Assembly: GCF_902713615.1 (NCBI RefSeq)
Contig: NC_052166.1
Location: 2,156,961-2,220,960 of the forward strand
DNA length: 64,000 bases
From: Scyliorhinus canicula
Taxonomy: Eukaryota
Reading direction: 5' to 3'
In this document: positions 5,719-58,927 of the stretch, in pieces
How positions within the stretch are numbered: position 1 is the stretch's first letter
How the letters are laid out: each line of letters begins with the position of its first letter
The notes under the pieces: generated by a model
The model's database searches: none
Told to the model about the DNA's origin: nothing
The model's input: the letters and a program-made list of their open reading frames with translations, nothing else
Position numbers and translations under genes: made by a program

Positions 5719-5810
5719 ACCATCACAACAATTTATACCCCAAGAGAAAAAGGTGCTGATTGGTTGGCCAGTAGACTCTGATTGGTCAAGCTGTACCATT
5801 GGCTCTTTGA
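5719..5810 (-). promoter_or_regulatory. Three CCAAT boxes plus TATA (mirror copy of 58,808-58,927, downstream part lost)
   Basis: Plus strand TTTATACC..CTGATTGG..CTGATTGG..CATTGGCTC. The sequence about 17 bp past TATA is replaced by CR1. Confidence 0.45.
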
Positions 5811-6079
5811 GATCCCAGGTAATTCAAAAAGTTGCAAGGCTTGAATATATTCCTTTTGTTTGCAGTTGGGTCCCTGTTTTGAATGTTTGTCACTTCGAGC
5901 AAGTATAAATGAACGACAAGCCCAACTGAATAAACTACATTACAAGCTGGGAAAATGAGAAATCCACAGGTAGTCAAGGAAAAGGAGGTCTATTTGGAGA
6001 TATTGAGGAGAGTTTGCCTTAGATTAAAAAGGAAACCTATGATACTGGAACAAGAAAAAACCTTGTTTCAATTTAGCCA

Positions 6080-6960
6080 AACTGCAACTTCCCAGTCCAA
6101 GGCACAGGTTAGGGATGTCAAAAATTGAGATGCATCAATTAGCCTCCCTTGGCATTTTTCAGAAGCTTGCAAACAATTTGACGTCCCAAGACAGACACTT
6201 CAAAAAAAAATATCTTCAACTTGGAGACTTTATGCTTCATAAGACAACTGTTCATTTGACGTTTCAGTCCCCCTGTGGGAAAATCTTCAATTCTGAACAG
6301 CCTAAGCAGTTAATTAGCACGGTTCATGATATTTTGTATTCTGGAGACTTTGTGAGTATAATTGAAACACTGCAGCCTTGGAAAAGAGACCTTGCAGACA
6401 ATATTGATGAGGAGACCTGGGGTAATATATGGGGATAAGAAAAGAAAATTTCAGGCTGCAATAGAACGAAGGAGACTCAGTTCAAAATATTGCACCATCT
6501 GCATATAACACAAAGGTTCAGACACAGGTTGACCCTGCTATATCCTCAATGTACCTAAAGTGCCAGATAGTTCAGGGTGACTACAACACAGTGTGTGGTC
6601 CTGTGTCAAAATTCAATCCTACTGGTCTGGTATACTGAAAGAGCTTGAGAAGATATTCGGCACAGTCTTAGAATTTGATTCTTTATTCTTACTTCTGCAG
6701 CTCCCAGATAGCAGAATCGTTGACGTTCATAAAAAAAAGGGTATATAATAGGTTAACCCTTGCGGCACAGAAGAACATTCTTTGATTGTGGATTAATAAT
6801 AAGTATCCCTCAATTCAGAATTGGCATCAAATTATCATGGATTGTATTCCTTCGGAGGGAAGGTTAGGCTTTATCGATTCTTTATACATCGCTCGATTCT
6901 GGAAGGGTGCCAGTGAACCTAGCACCTGTATTCAAGGAATGAGGGAGAGAGAACGCAGGG
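6080..6960 (+). mobile_element. Old L1-like LINE ORF2 C-terminal remnant (mirrored at about 57,650-58,530)
   Basis: LISTVHDIL..LQPWKRDLADNIDEETWGNIW, then broken QFKILHHLHIT and VWSCVKIQSYW motifs. Confidence 0.65.
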
Positions 6961-7331
6961 AGTAACAGCCATTCATATTCTTTTCGCTTTATCCCCTCCT
7001 AGACCCTTCTCTCCTGTCATCATTTCTCCCATCTCGGGGATGAGGCCCTTCCAAACCCAAGCCCAAATTTCTCCAGCACTCCTCGATCTCACTCCTCACA
7101 GGGTTGATGTCCTCTGAGATAAGCCTACAGCTTCCCAATATGCCTCCCCGGCATCCTCCGCAGGGCCTATTGAGGCATTTGGCACTGCCTGTTTATGAAC
7201 AACAATCCCCCAACCCCCTTATCCCAAAACCTCCATCCAGTCACAACAAGATTTGCTACAAAAACAATATTGTGCCAGAAATCGGAAACAAGATCAGAAA
7301 ATGCCGGGACTACTCAGCAAAGTCAGGTAGT

Positions 7332-7502
7332 GGGTGGGATTCTCCATCCCTCAGCACCAGATTTATGCTGCGGCGAGCCCCCCAGGATTCTCCGTCTCGC
7401 CAGCCGGCCAATGGGGTTTCCTATTGTGGGCATGCCTCTGCTGTCGGGAAATCTCCGGACTGCCGGCGTAACGGAGAATCCCCACAGTGGAGAATCCAGC
7501 CC
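7332..7502. mobile_element. 171-bp Harbinger-type MITE with 3-bp TSD AGT (mirrored near 57,105-57,280)
   Basis: TIRs GGGTGGGATTCTCC / GGAGAATCCAGCCC. AGT at 7329-7331 and 7503-7505. Confidence 0.85.
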
Positions 7503-7708
7503 AGTATCTGTGGAGTGACAGAGAAAATGGACAGAATCATGAAGGTGACAGGGGTCTTTGAGGCGTGCTCCCTGTCCATCGCTTGGTTAGTACCAGCAAT
7601 GGTGGCATGAGGTCCTTATGTGGGTATTAATTAATCAGGGTTCTCTCCAGAGGAACCATTGCCCCACCCCTGCCATCAAACGCACCACAGGGAGGGCACA
7701 CGATTCTG

Positions 7709-7765
7709 CCTAATGTTTCAGTTTGACGTCCTTTCATCAGAGCTGACCTGCTGAGTATTTCCAGC
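7709..7765 (-). mobile_element. Decayed Penelope-like pseudo-LTR remnant with degenerate hammerhead core
   Basis: Reverse complement CTCTGATGAAAGGACGTCAAACTGAAACATTAG. Plus-strand copy at about 56,845-56,900. Confidence 0.45.
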
Positions 7766-8039
7766 TCGCTCTGTTTTCAGAACGAGCATTGTTACATCAC
7801 TTTAGTTTCACTGGGATGGCAGACATGCTTTGTTGGTTTGATGAACAGGCTTTGGAAGCCAAATAGCTTTGCAAGCTGTGGAAAGTCCCTGAAAAATCAG
7901 AACAATGCAGATGGATATCACTGACATCAAACAAGTTAATCTTGCTTGACTTGGTCCACTTAGTTACAGTAAACCTTCCTGCTCATAATGGTTCATTGTT
8001 TCATTACCCTGTGACACGACTCCATTTAGTGAATTTGTT

Positions 8040-8310
8040 TATCAATAAAAGGGGAAAGAATTAATGGGAACCTGAGGAGCAACTTTTTTACACAGAGGGT
8101 GGTACGTATGTGGAATGAGCTACCGGAGGAAGTGGTTGAGGCAGGAACATTGGCAACATTTAAAAAGTATTTGGACAGATACATGGATAGGAAAGGTTTA
8201 GAGGGAGGGAATGGGTCAAATGTAAGCAAATAGGGTTAGCTCAGATGGGCTTTTTGGTTGGCATGGACCAGTTTGGGCCAAAGGGCCTGTCTCCGTGTCA
8301 TAGATTCTAT
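8040..8310 (+). mobile_element. CR1 3' end fragment
   Basis: NLRSNFFTQRVVRMWNELPEEVVEAGTLATFKKYLDRYMDRKG and CR1 tail GGGCCAAAGGGCCTGT..ATTCTATGA. Confidence 0.9.
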
Positions 8311-8375
8311 GATCAGGAGTGAGGGACACCATGTTGGATAGGAAGACATCTTTCCAGCTGTTGTTTCCATTCTGT

Positions 8376-8578
8376 GGCTGGGATTTTTCCTGCATCGCAG
8401 CATGTTTTCTGATGGTGGAGGCAGCTTGCCATTGGCTGCGGCGAGATCTCCCAGTCCAGTCGCTATCTACCGTGTTTTTGGTGTCTTTCTCGTCCCTCAC
8501 CGGCGAACCCAATGCGGGGTGCTGCCTTCAGCGGGCCCAGATGGTCCTGCCAGCAAGGAGGGCCCTAAAATCGCACCC
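8376..8578. mobile_element. Degenerate Harbinger-type MITE
   Basis: GGCTGGGATTTTTCC ... AAAATCGCACCC termini. Hosts the left breakpoint of the arm-specific deletion. Confidence 0.55.
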
Positions 8579-9167
8579 TGTGTTTCTAGATGCAGCACTG
8601 ACTTAGTGTGTTAGGTTTTCAAATGTAACCAGTCTGATTGACACCTTAGATGTTCCTTAATCAAGTGACCATGCCATGAGGCAGACATGAGGCACTTCAA
8701 TAAAGGCCTCTCATAGAAACTCTCTAAAGAAGACTCGATCCATATATATGAAACATGGAGTATGGAAGTGAAGAAAAATAGAACACAGGGAAGACATTGA
8801 GGACCCAGGAACACAGCAAACTGCAACAACAACAAGGCTACAGGAAAAGGTAATGTGCAACTTTGGGGGGGGTCGCCCAGAGGCCGTGGTGGGTATGGAG
8901 AGATCAGGGCGGCATTTTAAAATGGCACCCCAGTCCCTTTGTGCACTGAGGAGAAATGAATGTAAGTGCAGCCTCAGCGCAGCTTTCCTCAGAAATTCCT
9001 GGAGAAGTTCATGATCCATAAATGATCTAGCACCGGCACCACATGGAACACACGGAACACAACTGATTCCAATGAAAAACAGGGTCCGATTCGACGGGGT
9101 CCAGATTGAAACAGCTGCATATTAGCACTCTACTCCCCACACAAACATACTCATCCCAGCCAACAAG

Positions 9168-9960
9168 ATGGCAGCACAGAGAGCAGCAGCCCGGTTTGCA
9201 AACACTGAGCTGGAGATGCTGCTGGAAGCCATGGAGGATAGGTGGGTCACTATGTTCCCCAGGGTAGAAAGGAGGCTGCCACCTTCCGCCATACAACTGG
9301 CCTGTGTGCAGGTGGCAGAGGCCGTGTGTGCCATGGAACGCCAGGAACGGCCAGCAGTGCCAAAAGATGAAAGGCCTCCTCAGGGTGGCCAGGGTGAGTG
9401 GGCAGCACTGTGCCCATTGCACCAACCCCTGTCCAACACACCCAGAGGGTGATTGGATCCCACCCGCTGACAGTGTGCACGCTCCCCACCCTGCACCACA
9501 TGCCAGCACACATACTCCTGTCATGGACGGGTGCCTGGGCCACTAATGCCTCCAGCCGCCCACTCCCTGTGCTGCCCACGTGCAACTGTCTAACACTGCG
9601 CACTTTCTGTCTCTCCCAACCCCCACCCGAGGAGAAGGCTGCGCATAACCACCAGGGGAGAGAGAGAAAACCGGAGGGGTACCGCCAGACCAGCAGCCCC
9701 TCACTATAGCGGATTGCCGGGTACTGGACCTGTCAGCGGGCCTGGAGAGAAGGCAGCTGCCAAGGCAGAGGTCGGCATTCGGAAACCGAACCCGCTGTGT
9801 TGCGCTTTCCCATGCGTACCCTGACCTGCAATCATGCATCATGGCTTGTGTCTTGCAGGATACCTGCGATGAGGCGGGCCCTTCTGGTGTCCCCCCCGAC
9901 CCCAACCCCAAGCGATTCCAGCAACGAGGAGGCAACAGAGTGATGAGAGCCCGCAAACTT
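9168..9960 (+). pseudogene. Harbinger Myb/SANT-like DNA-binding gene remnant (3 exons, frameshifted, truncated by CR1)
   Basis: MAAQRAAARFANTELEMLLEAMEDRW.. with donor AGG|GTGAG. Exon 2 EKAAHNH..KTGG, homologous to the gene at 36,707. Confidence 0.75.
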
Positions 9961-9965
9961 TGCAC

Positions 9966-10157
9966 TTGGAGTATAGTGTTCAATTCTGGTCGCCACACTA
10001 CCTGAAGGATGTGGAGGCTTTAGAGAGGGTGCAGAAGGGATTTACCAGGATGTTGCCTGGTATTAGCTCTGAGGAAAGGTTGGTTAAACTCGGTTTGTTC
10101 TCACTGGAATGACGGAGGTTGAGGGGCGACTTGACAGTGGTCTACAAAATTATGAGG
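9966..10157 (+). mobile_element. CR1 RT fragment
   Basis: HLEYSVQFWSPH..KDVEALERVQKGFTRMLPG. Confidence 0.85.
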
Positions 10158-12940
10158 GGCAATTCTCCGTCATCACGATAGCAGCGACAATGCGATCCAG
10201 AACTCACGTATGTTTGCATGTCATTAGCGAGTTCCCCGGTATTCTCCGGGGTCTCCGATTCTTCAATGTGCCGGGTTCCCAATAGCGTGGTTCACTTGTA
10301 CTTTTAAAAATCGTGAAACCATTGCTGTGCTTGATGAGGAAGAGAGAGGTCGGACACAGAGAGGCACAATTGTAGGAGGACATGCGATGGCAGAGCCCGC
10401 AGTGCCAACAGGGGCCACCATGTAGCCCATGCTAACATGTTGGCTTTCACCCCCTGCAGACAAGGGATCTTGCAATTCAACCAGAAATAGTGGCCTTCCT
10501 GCTGGTGGCCACAGACCTTGGGGATGCCCTGCAGCTGTTCGAGCTGGTGCTGCTTGAGAAGGAGGAAGCTGCAGCAGCGGAGCGTGCCCCAGAGGAACAG
10601 GAGGCAGCCAGCCAGGATGGAGAGCCAGTTGCCCAACAGACCAAGGAGGAGGTGGTACCAAGGATGGGTACCTGCCTCACCTATCAATCGAAGACTCCAG
10701 CTCAGCAGGGAGACAGTGCGACACATCTGCCAAATCATGGCACACCTGGCAAAGTGGGGAAATGGGGGAGGACACCCGCTCCCAGTGGCCGTCAAGGTGA
10801 CGGTCGCCCTGAATGTTTACGTGGCAGAGTCCTTCCAGAAACCAACGTGGGTATCTGTCCGGGATGTCACAGATCATGGCGCACAGGTGAATACGCACCG
10901 TCAAGGAGGCCATATATGCCCAGGCGGCTCAATATATCCACTTCAGAGCTGACCAGGATGCCTGGGCAGCAGGGTTTGCCGCCATCGACGGGATGCCTGG
11001 GTTCAGGGGGTGACAGGTGGTGATTGATGGGATTCATATCCCCTTACAAGCACCTGCAGGTGACAGGCCGCTCAACACCAGCTGAAAAGGGTTCCACTCA
11101 ATGGGCATGCAGCTGATATGTGCCCATCATGCACGCCTGCGGCCAGTACCCGGGCACTGTGCACGATATCTTCATCCTGGCACACTTGGTGATTCTTGAC
11201 ATGTTCAAGATGCACCACCCCCTCCCCACCTCTCCCCCGGGCTGTGGGATTGGCTCCTGGGCGACAGGGGTGGTCGTGACTGATGACGACTGTCCAGAGG
11301 CCACAAACTGATTCAGAGACCTGCTACAATGACACCCATACAGCAACCAGGAGTGTGATCGAGTCTAGGCAGACAAGGGAGGCCGCATGATGTGTGCATG
11401 AGGGCCAACGTGTAGGGGACGATCCAGGTTCACCAGCTGGTGGGGTGAGTGTGATCTGGCCGGGGAAGCGGACACCACATCCGCCCCCCACACCCCCTCG
11501 CCAAACACTCCCCTTGTCTGTAACCCCATCTGTGATACATACCTGCCACACTATGGGGTTCCATAGAATTTACAGTGCAGGAGGCCATTCGGCACATCAA
11601 GTCTGCACCGGCTCTTGGAAAGAGCACCCTACCCAAGGTCAACACCTCCACCCTATTCCCATAACCCAGTAACCCCACCCAACACTAAGGGCAATTTTGG
11701 ACACCAAGGTCAATTTATCATGGCCAATCCACCTAACCTGCACATCTTTGGACTGTGGGAGTAAACCGGACGCCCGGAGGAAACTCACGCACACACGAGG
11801 AGGATGTGCAGACTCCGCACAGACAGTGACCCAAGCTGGAATCGAACCTAGGACCCTGGAGCTGTGAAGCATTTGTGCTATCCACAATGCTACCGTGCTA
11901 CCAGGGATGCGGGCCCTGGGTTGGCAGTAACACCATGGGTTTGGTTTATGGGATGGAGGATGATGACAAGTTGCTCTGCGATGAGCTCCGGAGTGCTCCA
12001 TATCGTTTGACAATGTCTTTCTCCTGCCCACGGTAGCACTTTCCACCGTCCGCCTGGGTGATCCCTGCATGCAGGCTGGCCATTCCATCGCACAGTCCAA
12101 TTGAATCCCTGGGGTGACGGTGGTGGGGATGGTTGAGGGGTGAGGGATGGTGGAGGGGAGAAGGGGAGCCCAGGCCACCTACAACATCCACCCAATCCCC
12201 CCACAGCGTCCACCCACTCTCTGGCGAGCCCAGACCAGTCCACCGCTCACAGAGCACAGAGTCAAGTTGGAAACAGTGTGAACAGATGTTTAATCTGAAA
12301 ACATATATACAGATTTGTGCACTAGCTCCTATAACTAAACTGTGCCCTGCACCCGTGTCAACTTAACTGGTGTCTAACCTTCTGGTCTTATGGGCCCGAA
12401 TGCTAGGTCTTGGTGGATCCCAGACGGTACAGCAGGACTGGAGGCGGCCTGCTATGAATCCTGCCCTGTGACTTGGGTCAATGTTGGCGGGTGTCTTCTG
12501 GGGTCACCGAGCCTGGTTGAGCCCAGCTGCTGCACGGGCGTCCCAGGTGGCGTGGTACCATCCTGCTCTGCATGCTGCCAACCAGATGCACCAGGACAGG
12601 AAGGGGGGCCTGAGGTGCGGCAGTGTTCCAGCACCTCCCCAGCGGAAGTCACGACACCCCATCACCTCCTCCTCCCTCGGGATGCCCGATGCCCCCCAGG
12701 CTAATCCATGAGACAGAGGTGAGAGCAAAGTGAACCCCTCTCTGCACCTGCTGGTGCCGGATGCTCGCTGACAACCACCTAATGTAGTCCCTGGCTCAAC
12801 GGCTGCATATCCACGATTGATGGCCTCTGTCTGTTCCAGAGGCCAAAACCGGTCTGGACATCAGCTAGTCCCTAGGTCGGCCCGTCATCCGACCATCCGC
12901 CCCCTTGGGAGTTCCTACCTCCATCTGATGTACCGGAGCA
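10158..12940 (+). mobile_element. Decayed Harbinger (plus-strand transposase remnant about 10,490-11,420; convergent minus-strand Myb-gene 3' remnant about 12,300-12,760)
   Basis: TIR-like GGGCAATTCTCC. Motifs RETVRHICQIMAHL, LPVAVKVTVALNVY, IDGIHIPL, ACGQYPGTVHDIFIL. Myb tail RAHKTRRLDTS*. Confidence 0.75.
11555..11900 (-). mobile_element. HE1-type V-SINE with CR1 tail inserted in Harbinger
   Basis: tRNA head GTAGCATTGTGGATAGCA..GGTTCGATTCC, V-domain, tail CACTGTAAATTCTATG. Confidence 0.9.
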
Positions 12941-13049
12941 GCTGTGTAGTGCGCACCAGATAGTGTCGAAGGAGCCTCTTCACTAAAGTGCTCGACCATC
13001 TGCCCGGGTGTGTGGGTTGGGGGTTGCTAGCAGGGGCACAGTGCTGCCT

Positions 13050-15515
13050 ACTCACCCTGACCGTACTGAGGAGGTTGTGCAATTTGTTCTGGCGCTGCTG
13101 GGGGAGGGGGGGGGGGGGATGAGGTGGGGGTGGGACGCAGTTTCCGTGCCCCTGGCCAGTCACTGCCCTAGTCGGAAACCTGGAGGCGAACAGAGCGTCC
13201 TGTGCGTCCTGTCCCGCCACAATGCCGGAAACCCTCCATCGCTATGCTGGAGGGCCTCTCCAGAGTGGTCCAGACACCTGAACTGTATCTTCAGGATGCT
13301 GAAGCGCTGCTCAGTCATGCTCCTGGTTGCTGGGATGAGGTGGGGGTGGGACGCAGTTTCCGTGCCCCTGGCCAGTCCCTGCCCTAGTCGGGAACTTGGA
13401 GGCGATCAGAGCGTCCTGTGCGGGCTGGCCCTGGCGCACATATAGTGCGGCCTCCCATGCCTGCCTGGTCCCTCTGTCCATTCTCACCCTCCCCCACATC
13501 CTCCTCATCAGAGGAGGTGTGACATTCATCCTCCTCTTGCAGCAAGTCGCCCCTCTGCTGTGAGATGTGGAGGATGCAGCAGGCCGCCACAATGCCGGAA
13601 ACCCTCCAAGCGCTATGCTGGAGGGCCTCTCCAGAGTGGTCCAGACACCTGAACTGTATCTTCAGGATGCTGAAGCGCTGCTCAGTCATGCTCCTGGTTG
13701 CTGCATGGATGTCGTTGTAGCGGGTCTCTGCCTCGATCTGTGGCCTTCGGATAGGTGTCATCAGTCACAACCGCAGTGGGGAATCCGTCGCCCAGGAGCC
13801 AACCCCCAGCCGGGGCTGTGCCTCGAAGAGGGTGGAAATCATTGAGTGTGCCAGGACGGAGGTGTCATGCATACTGCCCTGGTATCGGGCATAGACATGC
13901 ATGATGTGCATCTCATAGTCACACACCAGCTGCACGTTCATTGAGTGGAACCCCTTTCGGTTTGTGTAAAGCGGCCTGCATCTGGTGTTCGTAGGGCGAC
14001 ATGCAACCCATCTACTACTCCCTGGACCCGGGCATCTCAGCGATAGTCACAAACTCCACTGCCCGGGAATCCTCGTGGTCGCGGTCCATATTGAAATGGA
14101 TGCATTGTGCCGCCTGGGCATATCGGGCCTTTGTGACAGGTCCCCACTCGGCACCTGGAAGGAGCACAGCGTAAAGTTTCAGGGCAAGAGTCACCTTGAC
14201 AGCCACCAGGAGGAGGTGTCCTCCCCTTTCTCCACGATGCCAGGTGCCCCATGATCTGGCAGATCTGTCTCATGTCCTCCTGGTGGGCCAGAGTCTTCGA
14301 CGGCATGCCGGGTCCTGCAGGTCCTCAAATGACAGGAGCTGCTGGTACACTCGAGACCTCATTTGGCACCTCCTTTACACCTTCTCCTCGGCCTGTTGGG
14401 CGGCAGGCTCTCCATCATCAGGCTGCCTTCTGATCCTCTGGGACCAGATCCACTGCTGCAGCTTTCTCCTCCTTAAGCAACCCCAACTCGTACAGCCACA
14501 GTACATCCCAAAGGGCTGCGGTGACTAGAAGGAAGGCCACCATTGCTGGTTGAATTTCCATATCCATTGTCTTCAGGGGATGAAAGACCGTCATGGTGTG
14601 TACCCCGTGTCCAACTAGGTCCACAGGGCTACACATGGGCCCCGGTTGGCACTGCCGCCGCATGTCCCCCCCTCCCCCATAGCCCTGTCGCTGCTAAGGC
14701 TACCATCGGTTGGCACTGCCAATAATTGGGGTGCACTGTGCCCCCGTGTTTGGTGCCACCCTGTCGGGGCGACTGTGTGCGTTGCCCTTGGTCGGGTCTC
14801 GTGATGTCCTTCGGTTGGTGGCAGCCCGTTGGGGGTCTATGACGGAGAGTGGGGTGCGGGGCTGGGATGCAGTAGTGATGGGGTGGAGGGTGGGGGCTGT
14901 GATGCAGAGGTGGTGGGATGGAGGGGGGGACTGGGGTGGAGGGCTGGGGTGCGGGCAGCCATACGGCTGGTGCCACTCCGCAGAACCAGGAACCAAGATG
15001 GTCGGTCAGTGGGGTGCGCAGCAAGATGGCTGCCTTGAAGGCCTCAGTAATGGTGGTCCCTGCCTAGACACTGCCACAGTCCCGTGAGGAGTCGCTCCGG
15101 CCCCACGCCCATCTCCTGGTCACCCTTTTCCCGACCCTGGAAGCATTCCTCCGCGCCGCCCCACTGCAGGCCGCCAAGCCTGTGTCAGGACAAGCAGCCC
15201 ATGGTCGAGTCTCTCTGTGTCAAGTATGGCATCTGTTTCTCGATTTTTAAAATTTCAGTGAACCTTCCCATTGGGAATTCGCTCCGGTAGATGCGGACAA
15301 TCGCAGAGGCCCCGGAGAATACCAGCCATGCCTGCTAATGATATGCCAACAGTGTTTATTGTATGTGCAGAGTTGAACGCATTGATGCCGCTGTCAAGGC
15401 ACCAGAGAATTGCGATTTGGTGTGAAACCGGAGCCCGCCACAATTTTGCGTCAACACTGATTTTCCGCCCAATTGCGTTTCCCAATTCCGGCGTCAGCCA
15501 ATGGAGAATCCCGCC
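13050..15515 (-). mobile_element. Decayed Harbinger with minus-strand transposase remnant and terminal TIR
   Basis: MTPIRRPQIEAETRYNDIHAATRSMTEQRFSILKIQFRCLDHSG, AVKVTLALKLY, MRQICQIMGHL. TIR GGAGAATCCCGCCC ends about 15,515. Confidence 0.78.
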
Positions 15516-16029
15516 CAAAGCCTTAAAGCTTGTCTATTTAACATTCCCTGTCCCATTCCCACTATTTTTCTTTGAGGCCCTCTTTGTTTCAGGCCCTTGA
15601 CTTCTCTGCCCATCACTTTTCTTGTTCTTCTTACTGTCCTTTGTTCTTGTCCTTGATTCCCCCTCCTCCGAGACTCAGAATTCCCAGCCTAATCCTATAG
15701 GTCTGGCAGACAGGAACATCGCTTGACAGATAAACAGTGAAGAATAAAACATATATTTTTCAAACATCTGGCTTACATAAGAAATAGCTCGACTCTGAGA
15801 ATGGCTTCTGAGATATGTCAAGCATCTACAAGTTCTGAGTGAAATTAAAGATACAAGGGGATTTCTGATCCAGTGAATAAATACATCTGTATTTCCTTGT
15901 GGAGATGAGTTGACCCAGATTCTGCACAATCATAAAAACATCCAGAGGCAATATTTTCTATTTTTTACCTCCACAAACAAAGAGATTACTCATAAATACA
16001 GATAAGGCACCAGGTCATTAGAATTCTTA

Positions 16030-48253: not shown

Positions 48254-48288
48254 GGGTACATAGGGCACCTCTGCCTCATACTCCAGCG

Positions 48289-48323: not shown

Positions 48324-51300
48324 TTTGAAACAAACCTGTTGGACTTTAACCTGGTGTTGTAAGACTTCTTACTGTGCTCACCCCAGTCCAACGCCGGTAT
48401 CTCCACATCATACTCCAATTATTCATACGCACACTTGCCTTTGGTTCCTTATATGGCAGCCGTACCCATGTCCCAAATTTTGGCCCGATCCCAAACCTCC
48501 AGTACCGCCATCAAATAACCTCATTCTACCCAATCGAATGCCTTCTCCACCTCAAGAGCCACCAGCACTTCTGTCCCCTTCCCTCTGCTGGAGAGAGGAC
48601 CATATTCAGCAACCTCCTCACGTTCAAAAACAACTGCTTTCCCTTAACGAACCCTGTCTGGTCCTCCCCGATCATGTTCAGGAGACACCATTCTAACCTT
48701 AAAGCTGACACCTTTGCCAAACTTTTGACATCTGTATTCAGCATCTGTATTATCATAGAATTTACAGTGCTGAAGGAGGCCATTCAGCCCATCGAGTCTG
48801 CACCGGCTCCTGGAAAGAGCACCCCATCCATGGTCAACACCTCTACCCTATCCCCATAACCCAGTAACCCCACCCAACACTAAGGGCAATTTTGGACACT
48901 AAGGACAATTTAACATGGCCAATCCACCTAACCTGCACATCTTTGGACTGTGGGAGGAAACCGGAGCACCCGGAGGAAACCCACGCACACACGGGGAGGA
49001 CGTGTATTCAGGACCCCCACTCCACCGGGTCCTTATAATAATAATAATCATTATTGTCACAAGTCGGCTTACATTATCACTACAATGAAGTTACTGTGAA
49101 AAGCCCCTAGTTGCCACATTCCGACACCTTTTCGGGTACACTGAGGGAGAATTCAGAATGTCCAATTCACCAAACAGCATGTCTTTCGGGATTTGTGTGA
49201 GGAAAGCGGAACACCTGGAGGAAACCCACGCAGACATGGGGAGGACGTGCAGACTGCACACAGACAGTGACCCAAGCCGGGAATCGAACCTGAGACTCTG
49301 GTGCTGTGAAGCAACACCGCTATCCACTGTTCCCCTCTGCTGCCCTGCCTTATCGTTCTTTAGCAGTAACGAGATGGAAACCCGCCCCATTGTTTGTGGA
49401 AAGACACTCCTGTCCATCGTGTCTTCGAACATGCCCACCAGCTTATCTTTAAATTTCTTATAGAAGTCGGATGGGAACATATCGGGCTGTGCCACATTCC
49501 CTGCCTGCATCCTCCCAATCGCCTCCTTCACCTCCTGCACCCTCACCAGCTCCTCCAACCCGCCCTCTCCCCCAACCTCGGGCAGTCTAACCCATCCACG
49601 GATTCCCTCATCTCCTGTTCCTCCTCTGGTGGCTCCGACCTGTATCGATCTCTATAAAATTCTTCAAATACTTCATTCATCAGCTCCGGAGACCCCACCA
49701 ACTTCCCGCCTTATTCTGTATCCGAACTATCTCCCTCTCCGCTGCCTCCTATTGAAGTTGACCAGCCAGCAATGTTCCTGCCTTTACCCCATACTCATAT
49801 ACTGCCCCTTTCACCTTTCTTAGCTTACATACCGCTTTCCTCACGGACAGCTGATCAAACTCCCTTGTAGCCCCTTCCTCTTAACCAGGAGACTCGGGAC
49901 AGTGCCCTCAGCAAACTTCCCATCTACCTCCAAAATCTCCTCTATCAGTCTTTGACATTCTTCCCTCTCCACCCTGTCTACCTTCACCTTAAATTAAATC
50001 ACCTTCCCCCCCACTACTGCCTTCAATGCCTCCCAGACCATTGATTGCGAGACCTCCCCTGTACAATTAAATATCACATACTCCTCAACCACCTTCCCAA
50101 TCTCACAGAAGCTCCGGTCTGCTCGTAACCCCACATCCATTCTCCACACCAGCCTCTGAGCTACCCCCTTTTCCAGTACCACATCCATCTAGTGCGGAGC
50201 ATGATCCAAAAACACGATTGCTCAGTACTCAGATATCTGAATCCCAGTCAATAGTGCCTTTCCCACCACAAGGAAGTCAATTCTTGAGTACACCTTGTGT
50301 ACCAGGGAGAAAAGAGAATACTCTCGCACCTCTGCATGTCGGAACCTCCATGGATCTACTCCTTCTAGCTCCTCCATAAACCCAGTCAACGCACCCACCC
50401 CCTGCCCCCCGATTGGGACTTGCCACCTTTGGGTTCAATACTATGTTCCAATCTCCCCTACTATCAGCTCATGGATATCCAGAGCCGGAATAACAGCCAT
50501 CACCTTCTTTGCAAACCCATTTAGGACCGTATGTTCTCACGAAAACCAGCAGCCTACCCTCCAGCGTACCCTTCACTACAACATACCTGTCGCCCGCCAC
50601 CATCTTCTCCATCTGAAACCGTACTGTCTTGCTGACACCTGAGCCCTACTGTCAAACCCCGAGTGGAATACTTGACTCACCCAGCATTTCCGAAGACTCG
50701 CCTGATCTTTCACCGTCAAATGTGTCTCCTGCAGCATCATTACATCAGCCTTTAAGCTCCTCAAATGAGTGAAAACTTTCAATCTCTTCATCAGTCCCTC
50801 CCTCTCTCCCTCTCTCCCACCCAGGTTGATAGGGTTGTTAAGAAGGCGTATGGTGTGTTGGCTTTCATTAACAGTTAAAGAGCCGCAAGGTTTTGCTGCA
50901 GCTTTATAAAACTAGTTAGACCACACTTGGAATATTGTGTCCAGTTCTGGTCGCCTCATTACAAGAAGGATGTGGATGCTTTGGAGAGGGTACAGAGGAG
51001 ATTTACCAGGATGCTGCCTGCACTGGAGGGCATGTCTTATGAAGAAAGGTTGAGGGAGCGAGGGCTTTTCTCACTGGAGCGAAGAAGGCAGTGACTTGAT
51101 AGAGGTGGACAAGGTGATGAGAGGCATGGATAGAGAGGATAGCCAGAGACTTTTCCCCAGGGTGGAAATGGCTGTCATGAGGGGACATAATTTTAAGGTG
51201 ATTGGAGGGAGGTACAGGGGAGATGTCAGAGGCAGGTTCTTTACACAGAGAGTGGTGGGTGTGTGGAATGCACTGTCAGCAGAGGTGGTAGAGTCAGAGT

Positions 51301-54300
51301 ATTAGGGACATATAAGCAACTCTTTGACAGGCACATGGACAGCAGTAAATTGAAGGGGTGTAGGTTCGGTTGATCTTAGAATAGGATAAATGGTCGGCAC
51401 AACATCAAAATGAAAATGAAAATCGCTTATTGTCACAAGTAGGCTTCAAATTAAGTTACGGTGAAAAGCCCTAGGTGCTAGATTCCGGCGCCTGTTTGGG
51501 GAGGCTGGTATGGGAATTGAACCGTGCTGCTGGCCTGCCTTGGTCTGCTTTCAAAGCCAGCAATTTAGCCCTGTGCTAACAACCCCGAATTAAAATAGCT
51601 TATTGTCACAAGTAGGCTTCAAATGAAGTTAATGTGAAAAGCCCCTAGTCACCACATTCCAGCGCCTGTTCGGGGAGGCTGGTACAGGAATTGAACCATA
51701 CAGCTGGCTTACCTTGGTCTGCTTTAAAAGCCAGCGATTTAGCCCAGTGTGCTAAACCAGCCCCTAATAATAATAATCTTTTATTGTCACAAGTATGAAG
51801 TTACTGTGAAAATCCTCCAGTCGCCACGTTCCGGCGCCTGTACGGGGAGGCTGGTACGGGAATGGAACCTGTGCTGCTGGCCTTGTTCTGCATCACAACC
51901 CAGCTGTCTAGCCCACTGAGCTAAACCAGCCCAATAAACCAGCCCATTCGTTGGCTGAAGGGCTTGTCCTGTGCTGAACTGTTCTATGTTACTATTCTGA
52001 CTGGGGGTCTCATACCCGCCCTTCCTATCCGCCATTATCATCGACCGGGGTCCTGCCTCTCACACTTCATCGAACCTCCAAAACCCCCAAACGACTTGCC
52101 ATTATCACTCCTCCCCTCCTTTCCTGCCTCCCAGGCCCATCAAAACCTGATCATCCAGACTTCGACAGCTGTGGCCCCATCTCCCAGCACACTCCCGTTC
52201 ACGATCAAACTCTGCTTGTTCATTAGGGGGCCCTAACCAAACCCCCCTCCTCCCAATCCCCTGTTCCATAGCCCAATTCCAGGGGGAAAAACACTCCCAT
52301 AAAGCCGATGCACATATCCCCCAAGCCCAAAGTACTTATAACAACCTCTAAACACAGGTAGACCACCCTCCTAAATTCAAACAACCCCAGGGCCCCTGCG
52401 TTCCCCAGTACAGAAATGTAAAGCACCATAGATGAAAAACAAAGACAAAGCCCAGTCCCCTTCCCCTCAGCTCAGGTTTCATTTCCAGTCCCATCTCTCA
52501 TTTCCGTCCCAATCCTTCGGCCTTCACGAACATCTCCACCGCTTCCACCATTCCAAACTAGAGATCCTTCGAGTTGTACATCACCCTCAATTTCACGGGA
52601 TAGACCACTCCAAACCGCCCGTCTTTGTTGTAGAGCCGTCTTCACCCATCCGAAAGCCGCCCGCCTTTTCGCCAGATCCTTTGTCAAACCCTGGTAAATT
52701 TGTACACCAGCATCCTGTGGTGAATGAGATTCACACGGTATTATAATCTGTATATATGTATCAATATTGTAAGTGCAGTTGCACTACCTGATCACCGGGG
52801 GAGTAGCTCTAGGAGTACTCGAGAGTTTGTACTGGGCTCCTCCCTTGGCTCCGCACAGGACTCCTCCCCCGGGAGCTTCTGTATAAAGATCCGTGCCACA
52901 GGGTCAGCCGGCCAGTTCACCGAAAGTTCAACGGCTAACAGACTGGCTCTGTTGTAAGTATATTAAAACCGCTATTCTAATCCTACAAGCACGTGTCCGT
53001 AGAATTGTTGGTTCCAACACATCCTCCCAATTCACCTCTCACCTTTGCTTTGCCCAGTTAGTGAACAACCTTACAAATTCACCGCTTATCACTTCGATCA
53101 GAGAATCCCTTGTGGGGGGAGCAGCACCACATTGTGCTCGTTCCCACGTTTTTATCTCCCTGAGACATCAACTCACTCGCCGACAGATTTTCGTTCACCC
53201 CCTTCTTTCCGCCATTCTTCTTCTGGGCCTTGACATCACAATATCTTCCTACACCGATTTATTCAAAAATTGCCCCTGGGATCAGGCATTAAAGTTCAAA
53301 GAAGCTAAAACCTCGGGTAGGAGCTTTCCCACGTGTGACCTCTGCTTACATTACGTCACCGGAAGTCAGCTCACACAGAGTATCTCTTGAGATTATATTC
53401 ATTTCCCATGGTCTCCCATTGTCTCCACGAGAGGTGCCAATTAGTTTCTGTATGCTTTAGAAGTATCCGTGTCTGGAAAAAATATCTCTCATAGTGTCAT
53501 TTACCAACAATTCAGCCAGTAACTGGCTTTACATGCTCAGCCACCTTTGGCTTGTATGTGCATTTTTTAAGAGCTCACAGGTCTTATTCAGTATTTACCA
53601 ATGTAATTTGGTGTTTTTCCTTCATTATTGTGGCACTAGAGTTTCAGTGTAGATAGATAGATAAAGATAGATAGAGGAATACAGCACAGAACAGGCCCTT
53701 CGGCCCACGATATTGTGCCGAACTTTTGTACTAGGTTAATCATAGAATTTTGGACACTAAGGGCAATTTATCATGACCAATCCACCCAACCTGCACATCT
53801 TTGGACTGTGGGAGAAAACCGGAGTACCCGGAGGAAACCCACGCACACACGGGGAGGATGTGCAGACTCCACACAGACAGTGACCCAAGCCAGAATCAAA
53901 CCTGGGACTCTGGAGCTGTGAAGCAATTGTGCTATCCACAATGCTACCATGCTGCCCTTAAGAAGAAATTAATCTACACTCCATTATTCTACCCTAATAA
54001 ATGTACCTATCCAATAGCCGCTTGAAGGTCCCTAACGTTTCCGACTCAACTACTTCCACAGGCAGTGCATTCCATGCCCCCACTACTCTCTGGGTAAAGA
54101 ACCTACCTCTGACATCCCCCCTATATCTTCCACCATTTACCTTCAATTTATGTCCCCTTGTAATGGTTTGTTCCACCCAGGGAAAAAGTCTCTGCCTGTC
54201 TACTCTATCTATTCCCCTGATCATCTTATAAACCTCTACCAAGTCGCCCCTCATCCTTCTCCATTCTAATGAGAAATGACCTAGCACCCTCAACCTTTCC

Positions 54301-57300
54301 TAGTAAGACCTACTCACCATTCCAGGCAACATCCTGGTAAATCTCCTTTGCACCTTTTCCAAAGCTTCCACATCCTTCTTAAAATGAGGTGACCAGAACT
54401 GCACACAAATGTGGCCTGACCAAGGTTTTGTACAGCTGCATCATCACCTCACGGCTCTTAAATTCAATCACTCTGCTAATGAACGTCAGCACACCAGAGG
54501 CCTTCTTCACAGCTCTATCCACTTGAGTGGGAACTTTCAAAGATCCATGAACATAGACCCCAAGATCTCTCTGCTCCTCTACATTGCCAAGAACCCTGCC
54601 GTTAACCCTGTATTCCGCATTCATATTTGTCCTTCCAAAATGGACAACCTCACACTTATCAGGGTTAAACTCCATCTGTCACTTCTCAGCCCAGCTCTGC
54701 AGCCTATCTATGTCTCTTTGAAGCCGACAACAGCCCTCCTCTCTATCCACAACTCCACCAATCTTCGTATCATCTGCAAATTTACTGACCCACCCTTCAA
54801 CTCCCTCATCCAAGTCGTTAATGAAAATCACAAACAGCAGAGGACCCAGAATGGATCCCCGCGGTACGCCACTGGTAACTGGGCTAACCCTAACCCTAAC
54901 CCCAGTGTATGAGCATGAACTATAAAAAACTGCATGTGACTCACTGTGATTGTCAGGATTTGCTGAAATGGTGGAGCTATGATCCATACTCTGTTGCTGG
55001 ATCTCCCCCTCCCCACAGGAGTGACCCCTGTCCCCACCAGCCAGGTCAGCTGCAGCTTCCTTGAACTCAATAATCAGCCGTGATGACCTCCTATCCAGCA
55101 ACTTCCCAGGCCAGAGACGTGAGGTTGCTGTGTTTGCTGCTGCTATCCCGGGCATACAGGGTAAGTCTGTGTGCCTACACTCCTCTGAAATAGTGGGCAA
55201 ATCATTTAAATGGCCAAAGCACTTGTCTGTGATGGAGCTGCGTCTCAGAAGGAGGCCATTCGGCCTATTATGTCTGTGCTGTGCTGACTCTCCGAATGAA
55301 CAATTTACCCAGTGCCATTCTGCCACCTTCTTTCCGTAACCTTGGTAACATTCTTCCTTTTCAGATAACAATCTGGTTCAAGCTGTCTCCCATGCACATC
55401 AACCATGCATTCCAGAGCTTAACCACTCTCTACATAAGAATTCTAATGACCTGGTGCCTTATCTGTATTTATGAGTAATCTCTTTGTTTGTGGAGGTAAA
55501 AAATAGAAAATATTGCCTCTGGATGTTTTTATGATTGTGCAGAATCTGGGTCAACTCATCTCCACAAGGAAATACAGATGTATTTATTCACTGGATCAGA
55601 AATCCCCTTGTATCTTTAATTTCACTCAGAACTTGTAGATGCTTGACATATCTCAGAAGCCATTCTCAGAGTCGAGCTATTTCTTATGTAAGCCAGGTGT
55701 TTGAAAAATATATGTTTTATTCTTCACTGTTTATCTGTCAAGCGATGTTCCTGTCTGCCAGACCTATAGGATTAGGCTGGGAATTCTGAGTCTCGGAGGA
55801 GGGGGAATCAAGGACAAGAACAAAGGACAGTAAGAAGAACAAGAAAAGTGATGGGCAGAGAAGTCAAGGGCCAGAAACAAAGAGGGCCTCAAAGAAAAAT
55901 AGTGGGAATGGGACAGGGAATGTTAAATAGACAAGCTTTAAGGCTTTGGGCGGGATTCTCCATTGGCTGACGCCGGAATTGGGAAACGCAATTGGGCGGA
56001 AAATCAGTGTTGACGCAAAATTGTGGCAGGCTCCGGTTTCACACCAAATCGCAATTCTCTGGTGCCTTGACAGCGGCATCAATGCGTTCAACTCTGCACA
56101 TACAATAAACACTGTTGGCATATCATTAGCAGGCATGGCTGGTATTCTCCGGGGCCTCTGCGATTGTCCGCAGCCAATGGCAAGCTGCCTCCACCATCAG
56201 AAAACATGCTGCAATGCAGGAAAAATCCCAGCCACAGAATGGAAACAACAGCTGGAAAGATGTCTTCCTATCCAACATGGTGTCCCTCACTCCTGATCAT
56301 AGAATCTATGACACGGAGACAGGCCCTTCGGCCCAAACTGGTCCATGCCAACCAAAAAGCCCATCTAAGCTAACCCTATTTGCTTACATTTGACCCATTC
56401 CCTCCCTCTAAACCTTTCCTATCCATGTATCTGTCCAAATGCTTTTTAAATGTTGCCAATGTTCCTGCCTCAAACACTTTCTCCGATAGCTCATTCCACT
56501 TACGTACCACCCTCTGTGTAAAAAAGTTGCTCCTCAGGTTCCCATTAATTCTTTCCCCTTTTATTGATAAACAAATTCACTAAATGGAGTCGTGTCACAG
56601 GGTAATGAAACAATGAACCATTATGAGCAGGAAGGTTTACTGTAACTAAGTGGACCAAGTCAAGCAAGATTAACTTGTTTGATGTCAGTGATATCCATCT
56701 GCATTGTTCTGATTTTTCAGGGACTTTCCACAGCTTGCAAAGCTATTTGGCTTCCAAAGCCTGTTCATCAAACCAACAAAGCATGTCTGCCATCCCAGTG
56801 AAACTAAAGTGATGTAACAATGCTCGTTCTGAAAACAGAGCGAGCTGGAAATACTCAACAGGTCAGCTCTGATGAAAGGACGTCAAACTGAAACATTAGG
56901 CAGAATCGTGTGCCCTCCCTGTGGTGCGTTTGATGGCAGGGGTGGGGCAATGGTTCCTCTGGAGAGAACCCTGATTAATTAATACCCACATAAGGACCTC
57001 ATGCCACCATTGCTGGTACTAACCAAGCGATGGACAGGGAGCACGCCTCAAAGATCCCTGTCACCTTCATGATTCTGTCCATTTTCTCTGTCCCTCCACA
57101 GATACTGGGCTGGATTCTCCACTGTGGGGATTCTCCGTTACGCCGGCAGTCCGGAGATTTCCCGACAGCAGAGGCATGCCCACAATAGGAAACCCCATTG
57201 GCCGGCTGGCGAGACGGAGAATCCTGGGGGGCTCGCCGCAGCATAAATCTGGTGCTGAGGGATGGAGAATCCCACCCACTACCTGACTTTGCTGAGTAGT

Positions 57301-58807
57301 CCCAGCATTTTCTGATCTTGTTTCCGATTTCTGGCACAATATTGTTTTTGTAGCAAATCTTGTTGTGACTGGATGGAGGTTTTGGGATAAGGGGGTTGGG
57401 GGATTGTTGTTCATAAACAGGCAGTGCCAAATGCCTCAATAGGCCCTGCGGAGGATGCCGGGGAGGCATATTGGGAAGCTGTAGGCTTATCTCAGAGGAC
57501 ATCAACCCTGTGAGGAGTGAGATCGAGGAGTGCTGGAGAAATTTGGGCTTGGGATTTGGAAGGGCCTCATCCCCGAGATGGGAGAAATGATGACAGGAGA
57601 GAAGGGTCTAGGAGGGGATAAAGCGAAAAGAATATGAATGGCTGTTACTCCCTGCGTTCTCTCTCCCTCATTCCTTGAATACAGGTGCTAGGTTCACTGG
57701 CACCCTTCCAGAATCGAGCGATGTATAAAGAATCGATAAAGCCTAACCTTCCCTCCGAAGGAATACAATCCATGATAATTTGATTCCAATTCTGAATTGA
57801 GGGATACTTATTATTAATCCACAATCAAAGAATGTTCTTCTGTGCCGCAAGAGTTAACCTATTATACACCCTTTTTTTTATGAACGTCAACGATTCTCCT
57901 ATCTGGGAGCTGCAGAAGTAAGAATAAAGAATCAAATTCTAAGATTGTGCCGAATATCTTCTCAAGCTCTTTCAGTATACCAGACCAGTAGGATTAGCAT
58001 TTTGACACAGGACCACACACTGTGTTGTAGTCACCCTGAACTATCTGGCACTTTAGGTACATTGAGGATATAGCAGGGTCAACCTGTGTCTGAACCTTTG
58101 TGTTATATGCAGATGGTGCAATATTTTGAACTGAGTCTCCTTCGTTCTATTGCAGCCTGAAATTTTATTTTCTTATCCCCATATATTACCCCAGGTCTCC
58201 TCATCAATATTGTCTGCAAGGTCTCTTTTCCAAGGCTGCAGTGTTTCAATTATACTCACAAAGTCTCCAGAATACAAAATATCATGAACCGTGCTAATTA
58301 ACTGCTTAGGCTGTTCAGAATTGAAGATTTTCCCACAGGGGGACTGAAACGTCAAATGAACAGTTGTCTTATGAAGCATAAAGTCTCCAATTTGAAGATA
58401 TTTTTTTTTGAAATGTCTGTCTTGGGACGTCAAATTGTTTGCAAGCTTCTGAAAAATGCCAAGGGAGGTTAATTGATGCATCTCAATTTTTGACATCCCT
58501 AACCTGTGCCTTGAACTAGGAAGTTGCAGTTTGGCTAAATTGAAACAAGGTTTTTTCTTGTTCCAGTATCATAGGTTTCCTTTTTAATCTAAGGCAAACT
58601 CTCCTCAATATCTCCAAATAGACCTCCTTTTCCTTGACTACCTGTGGATTTCTCATTTTCCCAGCTTGTAATGTAGTTTATTCAGTTGGGCTTGTCGTTC
58701 ATTTATACTTGCTCGAAGTGACAAACATTCAAAACAGGGACCCAACTGCAAACAAAAGGAATATATTCAAGCCTTGCAACTTTTTTGAATTACCTGGGAT
58801 CTCAAAG

Positions 58808-58927
58808 AGCCAATGGTACAGCTTGACCAATCAGAGTCTACTGGCCAACCAATCAGCACCTTTTTCTCTTGGGGTATAAATTGTTGTGATGGTTTGAAAT
58901 TTGGCAATTAGTGTTTGGCCTGGTGAG
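58808..58927 (+). promoter_or_regulatory. Pol II promoter-like element: CCAAT x3, TATAAAT, then candidate short exon ending CCTG|GTGAGT
   Basis: CCAAT at 58,810, 58,827 and 58,849. TATAAAT at 58,875. Donor-like GTGAGT at about 58,923. Confidence 0.5.

What the first reader, a model, noticed from the sequence alone, without database searches (positions are those of the whole stretch)
5719..58894. ~53-kb palindrome: two ~14.3-kb inverted arms around a 17.6-kb spacer, next to an MHC-like gene
Seen: 5,719-26,970 is the collinear reverse complement of 44,620-58,894, sharing every nested TE insertion, with sparse substitutions and several arm-specific indels. Flanks beyond both junctions differ, which argues for paralogous duplication rather than two alleles. 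Inference: an ampliconic palindrome of the kind that undergoes arm-to-arm gene conversion and spacer inversion, sitting directly downstream of a class II alpha-type exon. Caveat: a 100-N gap lies 455 bp inside the spacer, so the arms are on different contigs.
Basis: partly seen in the sequence, partly recalled or inferred. Interest (0 to 1): 0.75.

Follow-up and report, generated by a model that had tools for sequence, protein, structure and literature searches.

The report
Mirror-image repeat across an assembly gap
The inverted repeat is really in the catshark assembly, but it is only the inner, gene-free part of a much larger mirror-image copy of a W-category MHC gene unit. The two halves lie on separate short contigs joined by an untested scaffold gap, so a true palindrome is not shown.

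Summary
Observation confirmed. Window 5,717-26,970 is the collinear reverse complement of 58,895-44,620: 13,986 aligned bases, 98.8% identical. The left arm carries 6,850 extra bases.

The reading as a self-contained 53-kb palindrome is only partly supported.

- The genome is the small-spotted catshark assembly sScyCan1.1.
- The arms contain only transposon sequence.
- They are the innermost high-identity blocks of a mirror homology that covers all of contig A (89.4 kb, left of the gap) and nearly all of contig B (99.4 kb, right of it). Both contigs are bounded by N runs.
- Each half carries a head-to-head WA/WB gene pair. The two pairs are deeply diverged (alpha-1 about 40% amino-acid identity), while the flanks are 96-99% alike.
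- The "outer junction" is the edge of a 16.2-kb block found only in contig A. Homology resumes beyond it.
- The left 9 kb of the spacer is a third copy of a flank segment and is cut off by the gap.
- No public contig bridges the gap.

My estimates:
- Two real paralogous units in opposite orientation: about 0.55. About half of that has the arms abutting as assembled.
- Retained second haplotype (false duplication): about 0.3.
- Contig A flipped, so the units are really direct repeats: about 0.1.

Read depth and long reads from the reference male would settle it. Earlier notes of this scan report other mirror copies across gaps in this same genome.

The parts
5717..8441 (+). Left arm, outer block. 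It mirrors 58895-56168 at 99.1% and is made of LINE-like and SINE sequence.
   Evidence: only two full copies in the genome, and parts of the block are interspersed repeats.
8442..15291 (+). 6,850-bp GC-rich block present only in the left arm. It is flanked by the 5-bp motif TGCGG on both sides and has no terminal LTR or TIR, only an internal diverged inverted repeat. Whether it is an insertion here or a deletion in the right arm is undecided.
   Evidence: No Pfam hits in its ORFs.
15292..26970 (+). Left arm, inner blocks. They mirror 56172-44620 and include a CR1-type reverse transcriptase remnant (16394-17086). Three differences are specific to one arm: 22442-22537, 23289-23576 and a 25-bp minisatellite at 24558-24776.
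   Evidence: Mismatch density runs from 0.2% to 3.2% per kb.
26971..27424 (+). Last 454 bp of contig A. The first ~110 bp continue an old interspersed repeat that began inside the arm, so this boundary is the uninterrupted, ancestral state. A SINE copy follows.
   Evidence: many 68-75% genomic copies span 26625-27078..
27425..27524 (.). Assembly gap of 100 N, the only N run in the window. It is the join between contig A and contig B.
   Evidence: No contig of four public runs bridges it; the listed joints are SINE-to-SINE or poly-G artefacts.
27525..36482 (+). Left part of the spacer. It is a third copy of flank segment U2: a direct repeat of 92,196-107,106 on the same contig (95-98.4%) and an inverted repeat of -38,527..-55,065 on contig A. 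The contig end truncates it.
   Evidence: Three-way site patterns are near-star.
36483..44619 (+). Right part of the spacer. It is GC-rich (up to 65%), carries several minisatellites and holds a PIF/Harbinger-type transposase remnant at 40224-41225(-). Its last 1.5 kb, together with the first 369 bp of the right arm, recur at 98.8% in a third, older unit about 113 kb upstream.
44620..58895 (-). Right arm (14,276 bp), the mirror of the left arm.
1..5716 (+). Right end of a 16.2-kb block (-10,496..5,716) found only in contig A. It holds a 16-bp satellite (1-1793), a 69-bp minisatellite (3688-3834), and a LINE ORF1 with an esterase domain (4253-5206) plus an endonuclease N-terminus (5344-5781).
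58896..59293 (-). Continuation of the inverted homology beyond the right arm at lower identity (86-93%). It matches contig A at -10,496..-10,662 and -15,060..-15,282.
61634..61747 (-). Transmembrane exon of the downstream W-category alpha-chain gene (WA_DS5-like, 'W_d'). The rest of the gene lies beyond the window's end.
Evidence: 87% identity to the cloudy catshark WA_DS5-like transmembrane region.

Best explanation
The two arms are the transposon-rich tails of two copies of one large repeat unit in the catshark W-category MHC gene cluster. The unit reads: WA_DS10 gene, ~21-bp satellite, 30-kb segment U, head-to-head WB/WA_DS5 gene pair, then the tail (the 'arm').

Contig B carries one whole unit. 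Contig A carries the other, from the satellite to the tail, in the opposite orientation.

The two W gene pairs are old paralogues. Everything around them is 96-99% alike. This most likely reflects a recent segmental duplication or repeated non-allelic gene conversion that stopped at large heterologies: the diverged gene core, the 16.2-kb block and the spacer.

Shown: the inverted homology, its full extent, the mosaic of divergence, and the different ages of core and flanks.

Inferred: that both units lie on one chromosome, and that conversion keeps the flanks alike.

Not shown: that the arms face each other across a 17.6-kb spacer. That layout rests on one linked-read scaffold join between two contig ends that themselves carry the repeat.
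For: Extent of the mirror:
- -61,999..-41,703 vs 114,164..93,725: 97.6%
- -40,058..-37,318 vs 93,726..90,987: 98.5%
- -37,319..-31,641 vs 90,145..84,504: 98.3%
- The gene-pair region is collinear but only 77-94% alike in patches.
- Then come the arms.

Old paralogy of the gene cores:
- WA of contig A is 87-89% identical to cloudy catshark WA_DS5L '159K'.
- WA of contig B belongs to another lineage; its alpha-1 domain is about 40% identical to that of A.
- Sharks carry clusters of W pairs, banded houndshark has about three WA_DS5 loci, and the family lacks high allelic polymorphism (PMC8713811).

Real duplications of this age exist here on a single contig:
- U2 occurs twice on contig B, 1.6% apart.
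- Contig A's copy is 2.05% from each.

Support for a genuinely inverted unit:
- The WA_DS10 region has a second, inverted copy at 185-191 kb (96.1% over 6.4 kb).
- That copy ends in the same satellite that begins contig A.
- U1 has only two copies in the genome.

Non-allelic conversion is active:
- A 1.87-kb patch at 98.8% lies on an otherwise 77-92% old copy Z.
- Mismatch density along the arms is strongly uneven.

Read-level hints:
- Contigs of two samples from different studies each include A-type pieces (including the A-only junction at 26970) and B-type-like pieces.
- Sample S1 shows letters at 25900, 26347 and 26656 that are neither A-type nor B-type nor from Z.
Against: - The layout matches the published signature of a false duplication. 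The copies are separated by a gap on one scaffold, both contigs are short and bounded by N runs, and contig A is collinear with B over its whole length (criteria in PMC9516828).
- A very diverged gene core inside near-identical flanks is also what long-lived MHC haplotype lineages look like.
- Contig A is the only one of four WA_DS5-type units on the plus strand, and all older arm copies have B's orientation.
- The cloudy catshark paper found no counterpart of B's W pair.
- Houndshark has one WA_DS10 locus; this assembly has two.
- The read evidence is thin. It consists of short low-depth contigs, the odd letters lie near contig ends, polishing errors could mimic them, and sample identities are coded.
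Confidence: 0.55

Rival explanations
1. False duplication. Contig A, and perhaps the contig with the second WA_DS10 copy, is the other parental haplotype of the region assembled in contig B. It was too diverged for purge_dups to remove, and linked-read scaffolding placed it beside B in reverse. The 'palindrome' would then be two alleles, and the two W pairs would be ancient allelic lineages.
For: - Both contigs are 89-99 kb, bounded by N runs, and mirror each other about the gap.
- Contig A is collinear with B from end to end.
- The assembly came from Falcon-unzip, purge_dups and scaff10x on PacBio CLR reads (PMC11979771). Gaps between copies on one scaffold are a listed hallmark of false duplications (PMC9516828).
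- A diverged core with similar flanks fits balanced haplotypes.
- Catshark class II haplotypes differ in gene content (PMC11958417).
- Gene counts in houndshark (three WA_DS5 loci, one WA_DS10) would fit three loci plus one here.
- Earlier notes list other mirror copies across gaps in this assembly.
Against: - About 40% identity in alpha-1, plus unalignable introns, would be extreme for alleles of a family reported to have low polymorphism.
- Divergence is a flat 1-4% over more than 100 kb and does not decline away from the core.
- A within-contig duplicate of the same age exists.
- Two samples each show both types, and S1 shows extra letters.
- Contig A and the second WA_DS10 copy are both inverted, which two independent haplotigs would show by chance only one time in four.
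- The inner boundary differs structurally. A has the uninterrupted old repeat, while B shares its broken form with an old paralogue.
Confidence: 0.3
2. A compact palindrome exactly as assembled. The arms face each other across a spacer of about 17.6 kb or more on one chromosome, exchange sequence by arm-to-arm conversion, and may allow spacer inversion.
For: - The scaff10x join survived Bionano hybrid scaffolding and manual curation. The neighbouring N runs of 35,252 and 13 look like optical-map gaps (pipeline; the meaning of the gap sizes is from my own knowledge).
- Uneven arm divergence, with identical tracts of about 1 kb.
Against: - No read bridges the gap.
- Linked-read joins between two contig ends carrying 98.8% identical sequence are prone to cross-mapping (inference).
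- Contig B's start is cut inside a repeat, so the gap hides more than 100 bases.
- The satellite that begins contig A also ends the second WA_DS10 copy about 190 kb downstream. This suggests A may belong there, with the arms pointing outward.
- Identity is far below that of known ampliconic palindromes.
Confidence: 0.27
3. Both units are real paralogues, but contig A is flipped. The true structure would be a direct (tandem) repeat like the other units of the cluster, so there is no inverted repeat at all.
For: - All other WA_DS5-type exons on this contig (three of four) and all older arm copies have B's orientation.
- An 89-kb contig is hard to orient by Hi-C or linked reads.
- After its arm and spacer, contig B starts a new unit in direct orientation.
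Against: - The second WA_DS10 copy is also inverted relative to the first and ends in the satellite that starts contig A in its present orientation.
- The assembly was curated.
Confidence: 0.1

Closest known systems
Ampliconic palindromes of primate sex chromosomes (P1-P8 type)
   Same: Two long inverted arms around a unique spacer. The patchy arm divergence is compatible with arm-to-arm gene conversion.
   Different: - Arm identity is 98.8% with kilobase indels, not above 99.9%.
- The 14-kb arms carry only transposons.
- The genes of the larger mirror are deeply diverged, not kept identical.
- Continuity of arm, spacer and arm on one molecule is not shown.
Heterotype false duplication (retained haplotig) in long-read assemblies, as described by Ko et al. 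2022 (PMC9516828)
   Same: - The copies lie on one scaffold, separated by a gap.
- Both contigs are short.
- The copies are 1-4% apart.
- The region belongs to an MHC-type multigene family.
   Different: - Half depth and absence of heterozygous sites could not be tested.
- The hints available (both types in two samples, extra letters in S1) point the other way.
- The gene cores are far more diverged than typical alleles.
Shark W-category MHC gene clusters (Okamura et al. 2021, PMC8713811)
   Same: - Head-to-head WA/WB pairs.
- Several pairs per cluster.
- Contig A's pair is the orthologue of the cloudy catshark '159K' pair, which also lies next to a WA_DS10/WB_DS1 pair.
   Different: The paper does not describe the relative orientation of the pairs, near-identical flanks around diverged pairs, or a mirror arrangement. 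It did not analyse this species' chromosome-level assembly.
Inverted low-copy repeats (segmental duplications) in mammalian MHC and other immune gene clusters
   Same: Tens of kilobases at 96-99% identity, a mosaic of conversion patches, transposon-rich sequence, and position flanking multigene family members.
   Different: Presence of both copies on one haplotype is unproven here.

Membership tests
Ampliconic palindrome | Two arms in inverted orientation, collinear over their length | tested here: met
   This holds in the assembly as given.
Ampliconic palindrome | Near-perfect arm identity (about 99.9% or more) maintained by gene conversion | tested here: not met
   98.79% over 13,986 bp. There is also a 6,850-bp arm-specific block, a replaced block and minisatellite differences.
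Ampliconic palindrome | Arm, spacer and arm contiguous on one DNA molecule | tested here: inconclusive
   A 100-N gap lies 454 bp past the left arm. No contig of four public runs bridges it, and only short Logan contigs were available.
Ampliconic palindrome | Arms carry multi-copy genes kept alike | tested here: not met
   About 30 ORFs of the arms, spacer and flanks gave only transposon domains. The W genes of the larger mirror are diverged, with alpha-1 about 40% identical.
Retained haplotig / heterotype false duplication | Assembly gap between the two copies on one scaffold, and copies that reach contig ends | tested here: met
   N runs at -97,251..-62,000, 27,425-27,524 and 126,888-126,900 bound both contigs. 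Contig A is collinear with B throughout.
Retained haplotig / heterotype false duplication | About half the normal read depth over each copy in the assembled individual | not testable with these tools
   Only Logan contigs were served, with no true depth. Shares of sampled words were ambiguous.
Retained haplotig / heterotype false duplication | No heterozygous sites within either copy (each is a single haplotype) | tested here: inconclusive
   Sample S1 shows letters that are neither A-type, B-type nor from Z at 25900, 26347 and 26656, and its A-junction contig has one difference from the assembly. These lie near contig ends, and it is not certain that S1 is the reference male.
Inverted segmental duplication | At least 1 kb at 90% identity or more, present at two loci of one haplotype | tested here: inconclusive
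   The length and identity criteria are met. Presence on one haplotype is not shown. Two samples each hold both types.
W-category MHC alpha chain (flanking gene) | Class II-type alpha chain exons matching published WA sequences | tested here: met
   The transmembrane exon at 61634-61747 is 87% identical to cloudy catshark WA_DS5L. The alpha-1 and alpha-2 exons just beyond the window also match (PMC8713811).

The most novel reading that the evidence does not exclude
A real mirror duplication with arms of about 90-100 kb in a shark W-category MHC cluster. Two anciently diverged WA/WB gene pairs would sit inside flanks kept 96-99% alike by ongoing conversion between inverted copies. The genes would stay different while everything around them is homogenised, and the segment between the copies could invert.
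Probability: 0.3. Interest if true: 0.5.

Novelty: new member of a known kind. Interest (0 to 1): 0.3.

Why it matters
If both copies are real, this would be a clear vertebrate case outside the sex chromosomes of a large inverted duplication whose gene cores are old and diverged while the flanks are young or homogenised. That bears on how W-category MHC genes diversify and on structural instability in the cluster.

If it is a retained haplotype, the count of W-category genes in the catshark reference is inflated: four WA_DS5-type and two WA_DS10 genes are currently counted. The two W pairs would then be the first very old allelic lineages reported for this family.

Either way, users of sScyCan1.1 should not take gene number or orientation in this region at face value.

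Tried and rejected
1. **Gap bridging.** I laid the contigs of four runs on 22300-28299. No joint crosses 27425-27524. The listed joints 22507>27228 and similar are SINE-to-SINE, and 23559>27638 is poly-G to poly-G. This is no evidence for or against continuity.
2. **Dosage from shares of sampled words**. S1 runs hold 0.45-0.50 of the A-only region and 0.32-0.36 of the B-only region. Depending on the assumed transposon floor, this fits one or two copies per diploid genome, so I rejected it as evidence. The 2021 runs (P2) hold more than the presumed reference runs, so they are probably RNA or targeted libraries. Their individuals are unknown.
3. **Contig depths** (about 3 versus about 6-7.6 in X1). 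These cannot be calibrated without a single-copy control.
4. **LINE continuity across the outer junction.** The endonuclease match ends at 5706, and no downstream ORF continues it. Not supported.
5. **The 6,850-bp block as a simple transposon.** It has no LTR or TIR. Only a 5-bp repeat (TGCGG) flanks it. Insertion versus deletion stays open.
6. **Protein search with the alpha-2 exon of the downstream WA**. It found one bullhead shark protein only, which gives no help on other catshark individuals.
7. **Fetching more flank.** I therefore could not check whether a gap follows the second WA_DS10 satellite.
8. **Frame error.** I used a peptide one base out of frame. Its four hits and their strands are valid as DNA-level homologues, but the identities are not.
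9. **The third-haplotype letters.** One of the four (26465) can come from copy Z, so I dropped it.

Full report
**What genome this is.** The window is G000:C21:2,156,961-2,220,960 of a 4.22-Gb assembly with 646 records. That matches the small-spotted catshark reference sScyCan1.1, which has 31 chromosomes plus 614 unplaced contigs and totals 4.22 Gb (PMC11979771). Earlier notes of this scan name the same species. The repeats seen by Tandem Repeats Finder also look like shark SINEs and minisatellites; that last point is from my own knowledge.

**The observation.**
- Block-wise alignment gives 13,986 aligned bases, 169 mismatches (98.79% identity) and 24 small indels.
- The left arm is longer because 8442-15291 is absent from the right arm. 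The break is clean, with TGCGG on both sides.
- The right arm lacks 96 bp of a SINE (22442-22537).
- 23289-23576 is replaced on the right by other sequence.
- Two minisatellites differ in copy number.
- ORFs of equal length lie mirrored in both arms.
- Only transposon domains were found: reverse transcriptase, LINE endonuclease, LINE ORF1 esterase, and a Harbinger-type transposase in the spacer.
- The outer arm piece has exactly two full copies in the genome.

The arms are gene-free.

**The wider picture.** I fetched 100 kb on each side and compared the resulting 264 kb with itself. Coordinates below are window coordinates.

There are three N runs: -97,251..-62,000 (35,252 N), 27,425-27,524 (100 N) and 126,888-126,900 (13 N). 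They define contig A as -61,999..27,424 (89.4 kb) and contig B as 27,525..126,887 (99.4 kb).

A and B mirror each other almost from end to end:
- A 30-kb segment, which I call U, matches at 97.6-98.5% (-61,999..-31,641 against 114,164..84,504).
- A collinear but much more diverged stretch follows (-31,292..-10,496 against 84,504..58,895, alignable only in patches of 77-94%).
- Then come the arms.

The "outer junction" at 5717/58895 is therefore not the end of the homology. Contig A has a 16.2-kb block there (satellite, minisatellite, LINE) that B lacks. A also has a 4.4-kb block at -15,060..-10,662, which coincides with a young LTR element noted earlier (s1-237853).

The spacer is not simple either. 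Its left 9 kb (27,525-36,482) is a third copy of part of U. It is a direct repeat of 92,196-107,106 on the same contig, and the contig end cuts it off. The gap therefore hides more than a trivial stretch.

**What the diverged stretch holds.** Earlier notes place head-to-head W-category MHC gene pairs on both sides. Using short peptides printed in the supplement of Okamura et al. 2021 (PMC8713811), tblastn shows the following:
- The alpha chain on contig A (alpha-1 at -19,854..-19,738, plus strand) is 87-89% identical to the cloudy catshark WA_DS5-like '159K' gene.
- The alpha chain on contig B (alpha-1 at 67,661..67,557, minus strand) belongs to another lineage resembling banded houndshark 'n4'. 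It is about 40% identical to A's alpha-1.

The gene cores are therefore older than the split of the two catshark species. The flanks differ by only 1-4%. That is less than the 6-7% by which contigs of a second, related species (coded organism B) differ from the arm.

**Further copies.**
- The WA_DS10 gene at 118-121 kb on contig B has an inverted twin at C21:2,341,915-2,348,330 (185.0-191.4 kb). The twin is 96.1% identical over 6.4 kb and ends in the same ~21-bp satellite that lies at 112.4-115.2 kb on B and at the very start of contig A.
- A unique piece of U has only two copies in the genome, one on A and one on B.
- WA_DS5-type alpha-2 exons occur four times on this contig. Only contig A's copy is on the plus strand. 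(One search used an out-of-frame peptide, so only positions and strands count.)
- Older arm copies at about -236 kb and -323 kb also have B's orientation.
- So does copy Z at about -113 kb. Z is 77-92% like the arms overall, but 98.8% identical to B over 1.87 kb that spans the spacer/right-arm junction. This looks like a recent conversion patch.
- Across the left arm's inner boundary, the sequence of contig A runs on through an old interspersed repeat that has many 68-75% copies elsewhere. A's boundary is therefore the uninterrupted state. The B/Z boundary is the broken state.

**Real duplication or two haplotypes?** The assembly pipeline was Falcon-unzip on CLR reads, purge_dups, scaff10x, Bionano, Hi-C and curation. 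Copies separated by a gap on one scaffold are a published hallmark of false duplications (PMC9516828). Earlier notes list other mirror copies across gaps in this same assembly.

Evidence for two haplotypes:
- The geometry of two short mirrored contigs.
- A diverged core with similar flanks.
- No counterpart of B's W pair was reported in the cloudy catshark.
- Houndshark has three WA_DS5 loci and one WA_DS10 locus.

Evidence against two haplotypes:
- The gene cores are extremely diverged, in a family said to lack high allelic polymorphism.
- Divergence stays at 1-4% over more than 100 kb.
- Contig B carries a within-contig duplicate of U2 that is 1.6% diverged, while A's copy is 2.05% from each.
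- The second WA_DS10 copy is also inverted.
- The inner boundary differs structurally between A and B.

- None bridges the gap.
- Sample S1 (2019, probably the reference male's short reads) has A-type contigs, including one across the A-only junction at 26,970. It also has contigs whose number of differences equals the local number of A/B differences.
- Sample S6 (2024, another study) shows the same mix.
- S1 also shows letters at 25,900, 26,347 and 26,656 that are neither A-type, B-type nor from Z. S6 and the related species share them. This hints at more than two arm sequences in one animal. However, the sites lie near contig ends, and polishing errors could mimic them.
- Depth and word shares could not be calibrated.

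**Verdict.** The inverted repeat is real in the assembly and is part of a much larger mirror of a W-category gene unit. My estimates are:
- About 0.55 that both units are real paralogues in opposite orientation.
- Within that, about half that the arms abut as assembled. The alternative is that contig A belongs beside the second WA_DS10 copy, with the arms pointing outward.
- About 0.3 that contig A is a retained haplotype.
- About 0.1 that A is simply flipped.

Uneven divergence along the arms runs from 0.2% to 3.2% per kb, with identical tracts of about 1 kb. Together with the Z patch, this makes gene conversion plausible. Neither conversion between these arms nor spacer inversion has been shown. 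By arm identity and gene content, this is not a member of the ampliconic-palindrome class.

Noticed in passing
L006:8297-9942 (window coordinates -41,703..-40,058): A 1,646-bp element is present in contig A but absent from both other copies of segment U. It has more than 35 genomic copies at 97-99% identity on many chromosomes, so it looks like a very young, probably still active transposon.
   Followed up: partly
L016/L024 (113.8-120.2 kb) and L025 (C21:2,341,915-2,348,330): The WA_DS10 gene region is itself an inverted duplicate: 96.1% over 6.4 kb, with the copies about 64 kb apart. Both copies end in the ~21-bp satellite that also begins contig A.
   Followed up: partly
L023 (C21:2,042,631-2,046,564): This third, old copy of the arm is 77-92% like the arms. 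It carries a 1.87-kb patch that is 98.8% identical to window 43,120-44,988 and spans the spacer/right-arm junction. The patch looks like a recent non-allelic conversion tract.
   Followed up: partly
window 59,890-60,615 and 3,688-3,834; also -16,520..-15,957, -26,848..-26,029 and 134,851-135,652: The same 69-bp minisatellite recurs next to each W gene unit, in both orientations.
   Followed up: no
window 1-1,793 and 126,901-132,878: Long arrays of a 16-bp satellite (GTTTGTGACTGTGTGT) are present. One of them starts the contig to the right of the 13-N gap.
   Followed up: no
window 36,000-42,500: The spacer's right half is unusually GC-rich (60-65%). It holds C-rich 21-bp and 45-bp tandem arrays (37,396-37,799 and 41,399-42,026) and long ORFs on both strands with no family match.
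   Followed up: partly
window 4,253-5,781: A LINE 5' part with an ORF1 that carries a GDSL-type esterase domain, followed by an endonuclease N-terminus. It breaks off at the left arm's outer boundary, and no 3' half was found.
   Followed up: partly
156,428-156,547 (L020 region, beyond the window): A further Ig-like C1-type exon is weakly similar to WA alpha-2 (35%). It may belong to another MHC-type gene between the two WA_DS10 copies.
   Followed up: no
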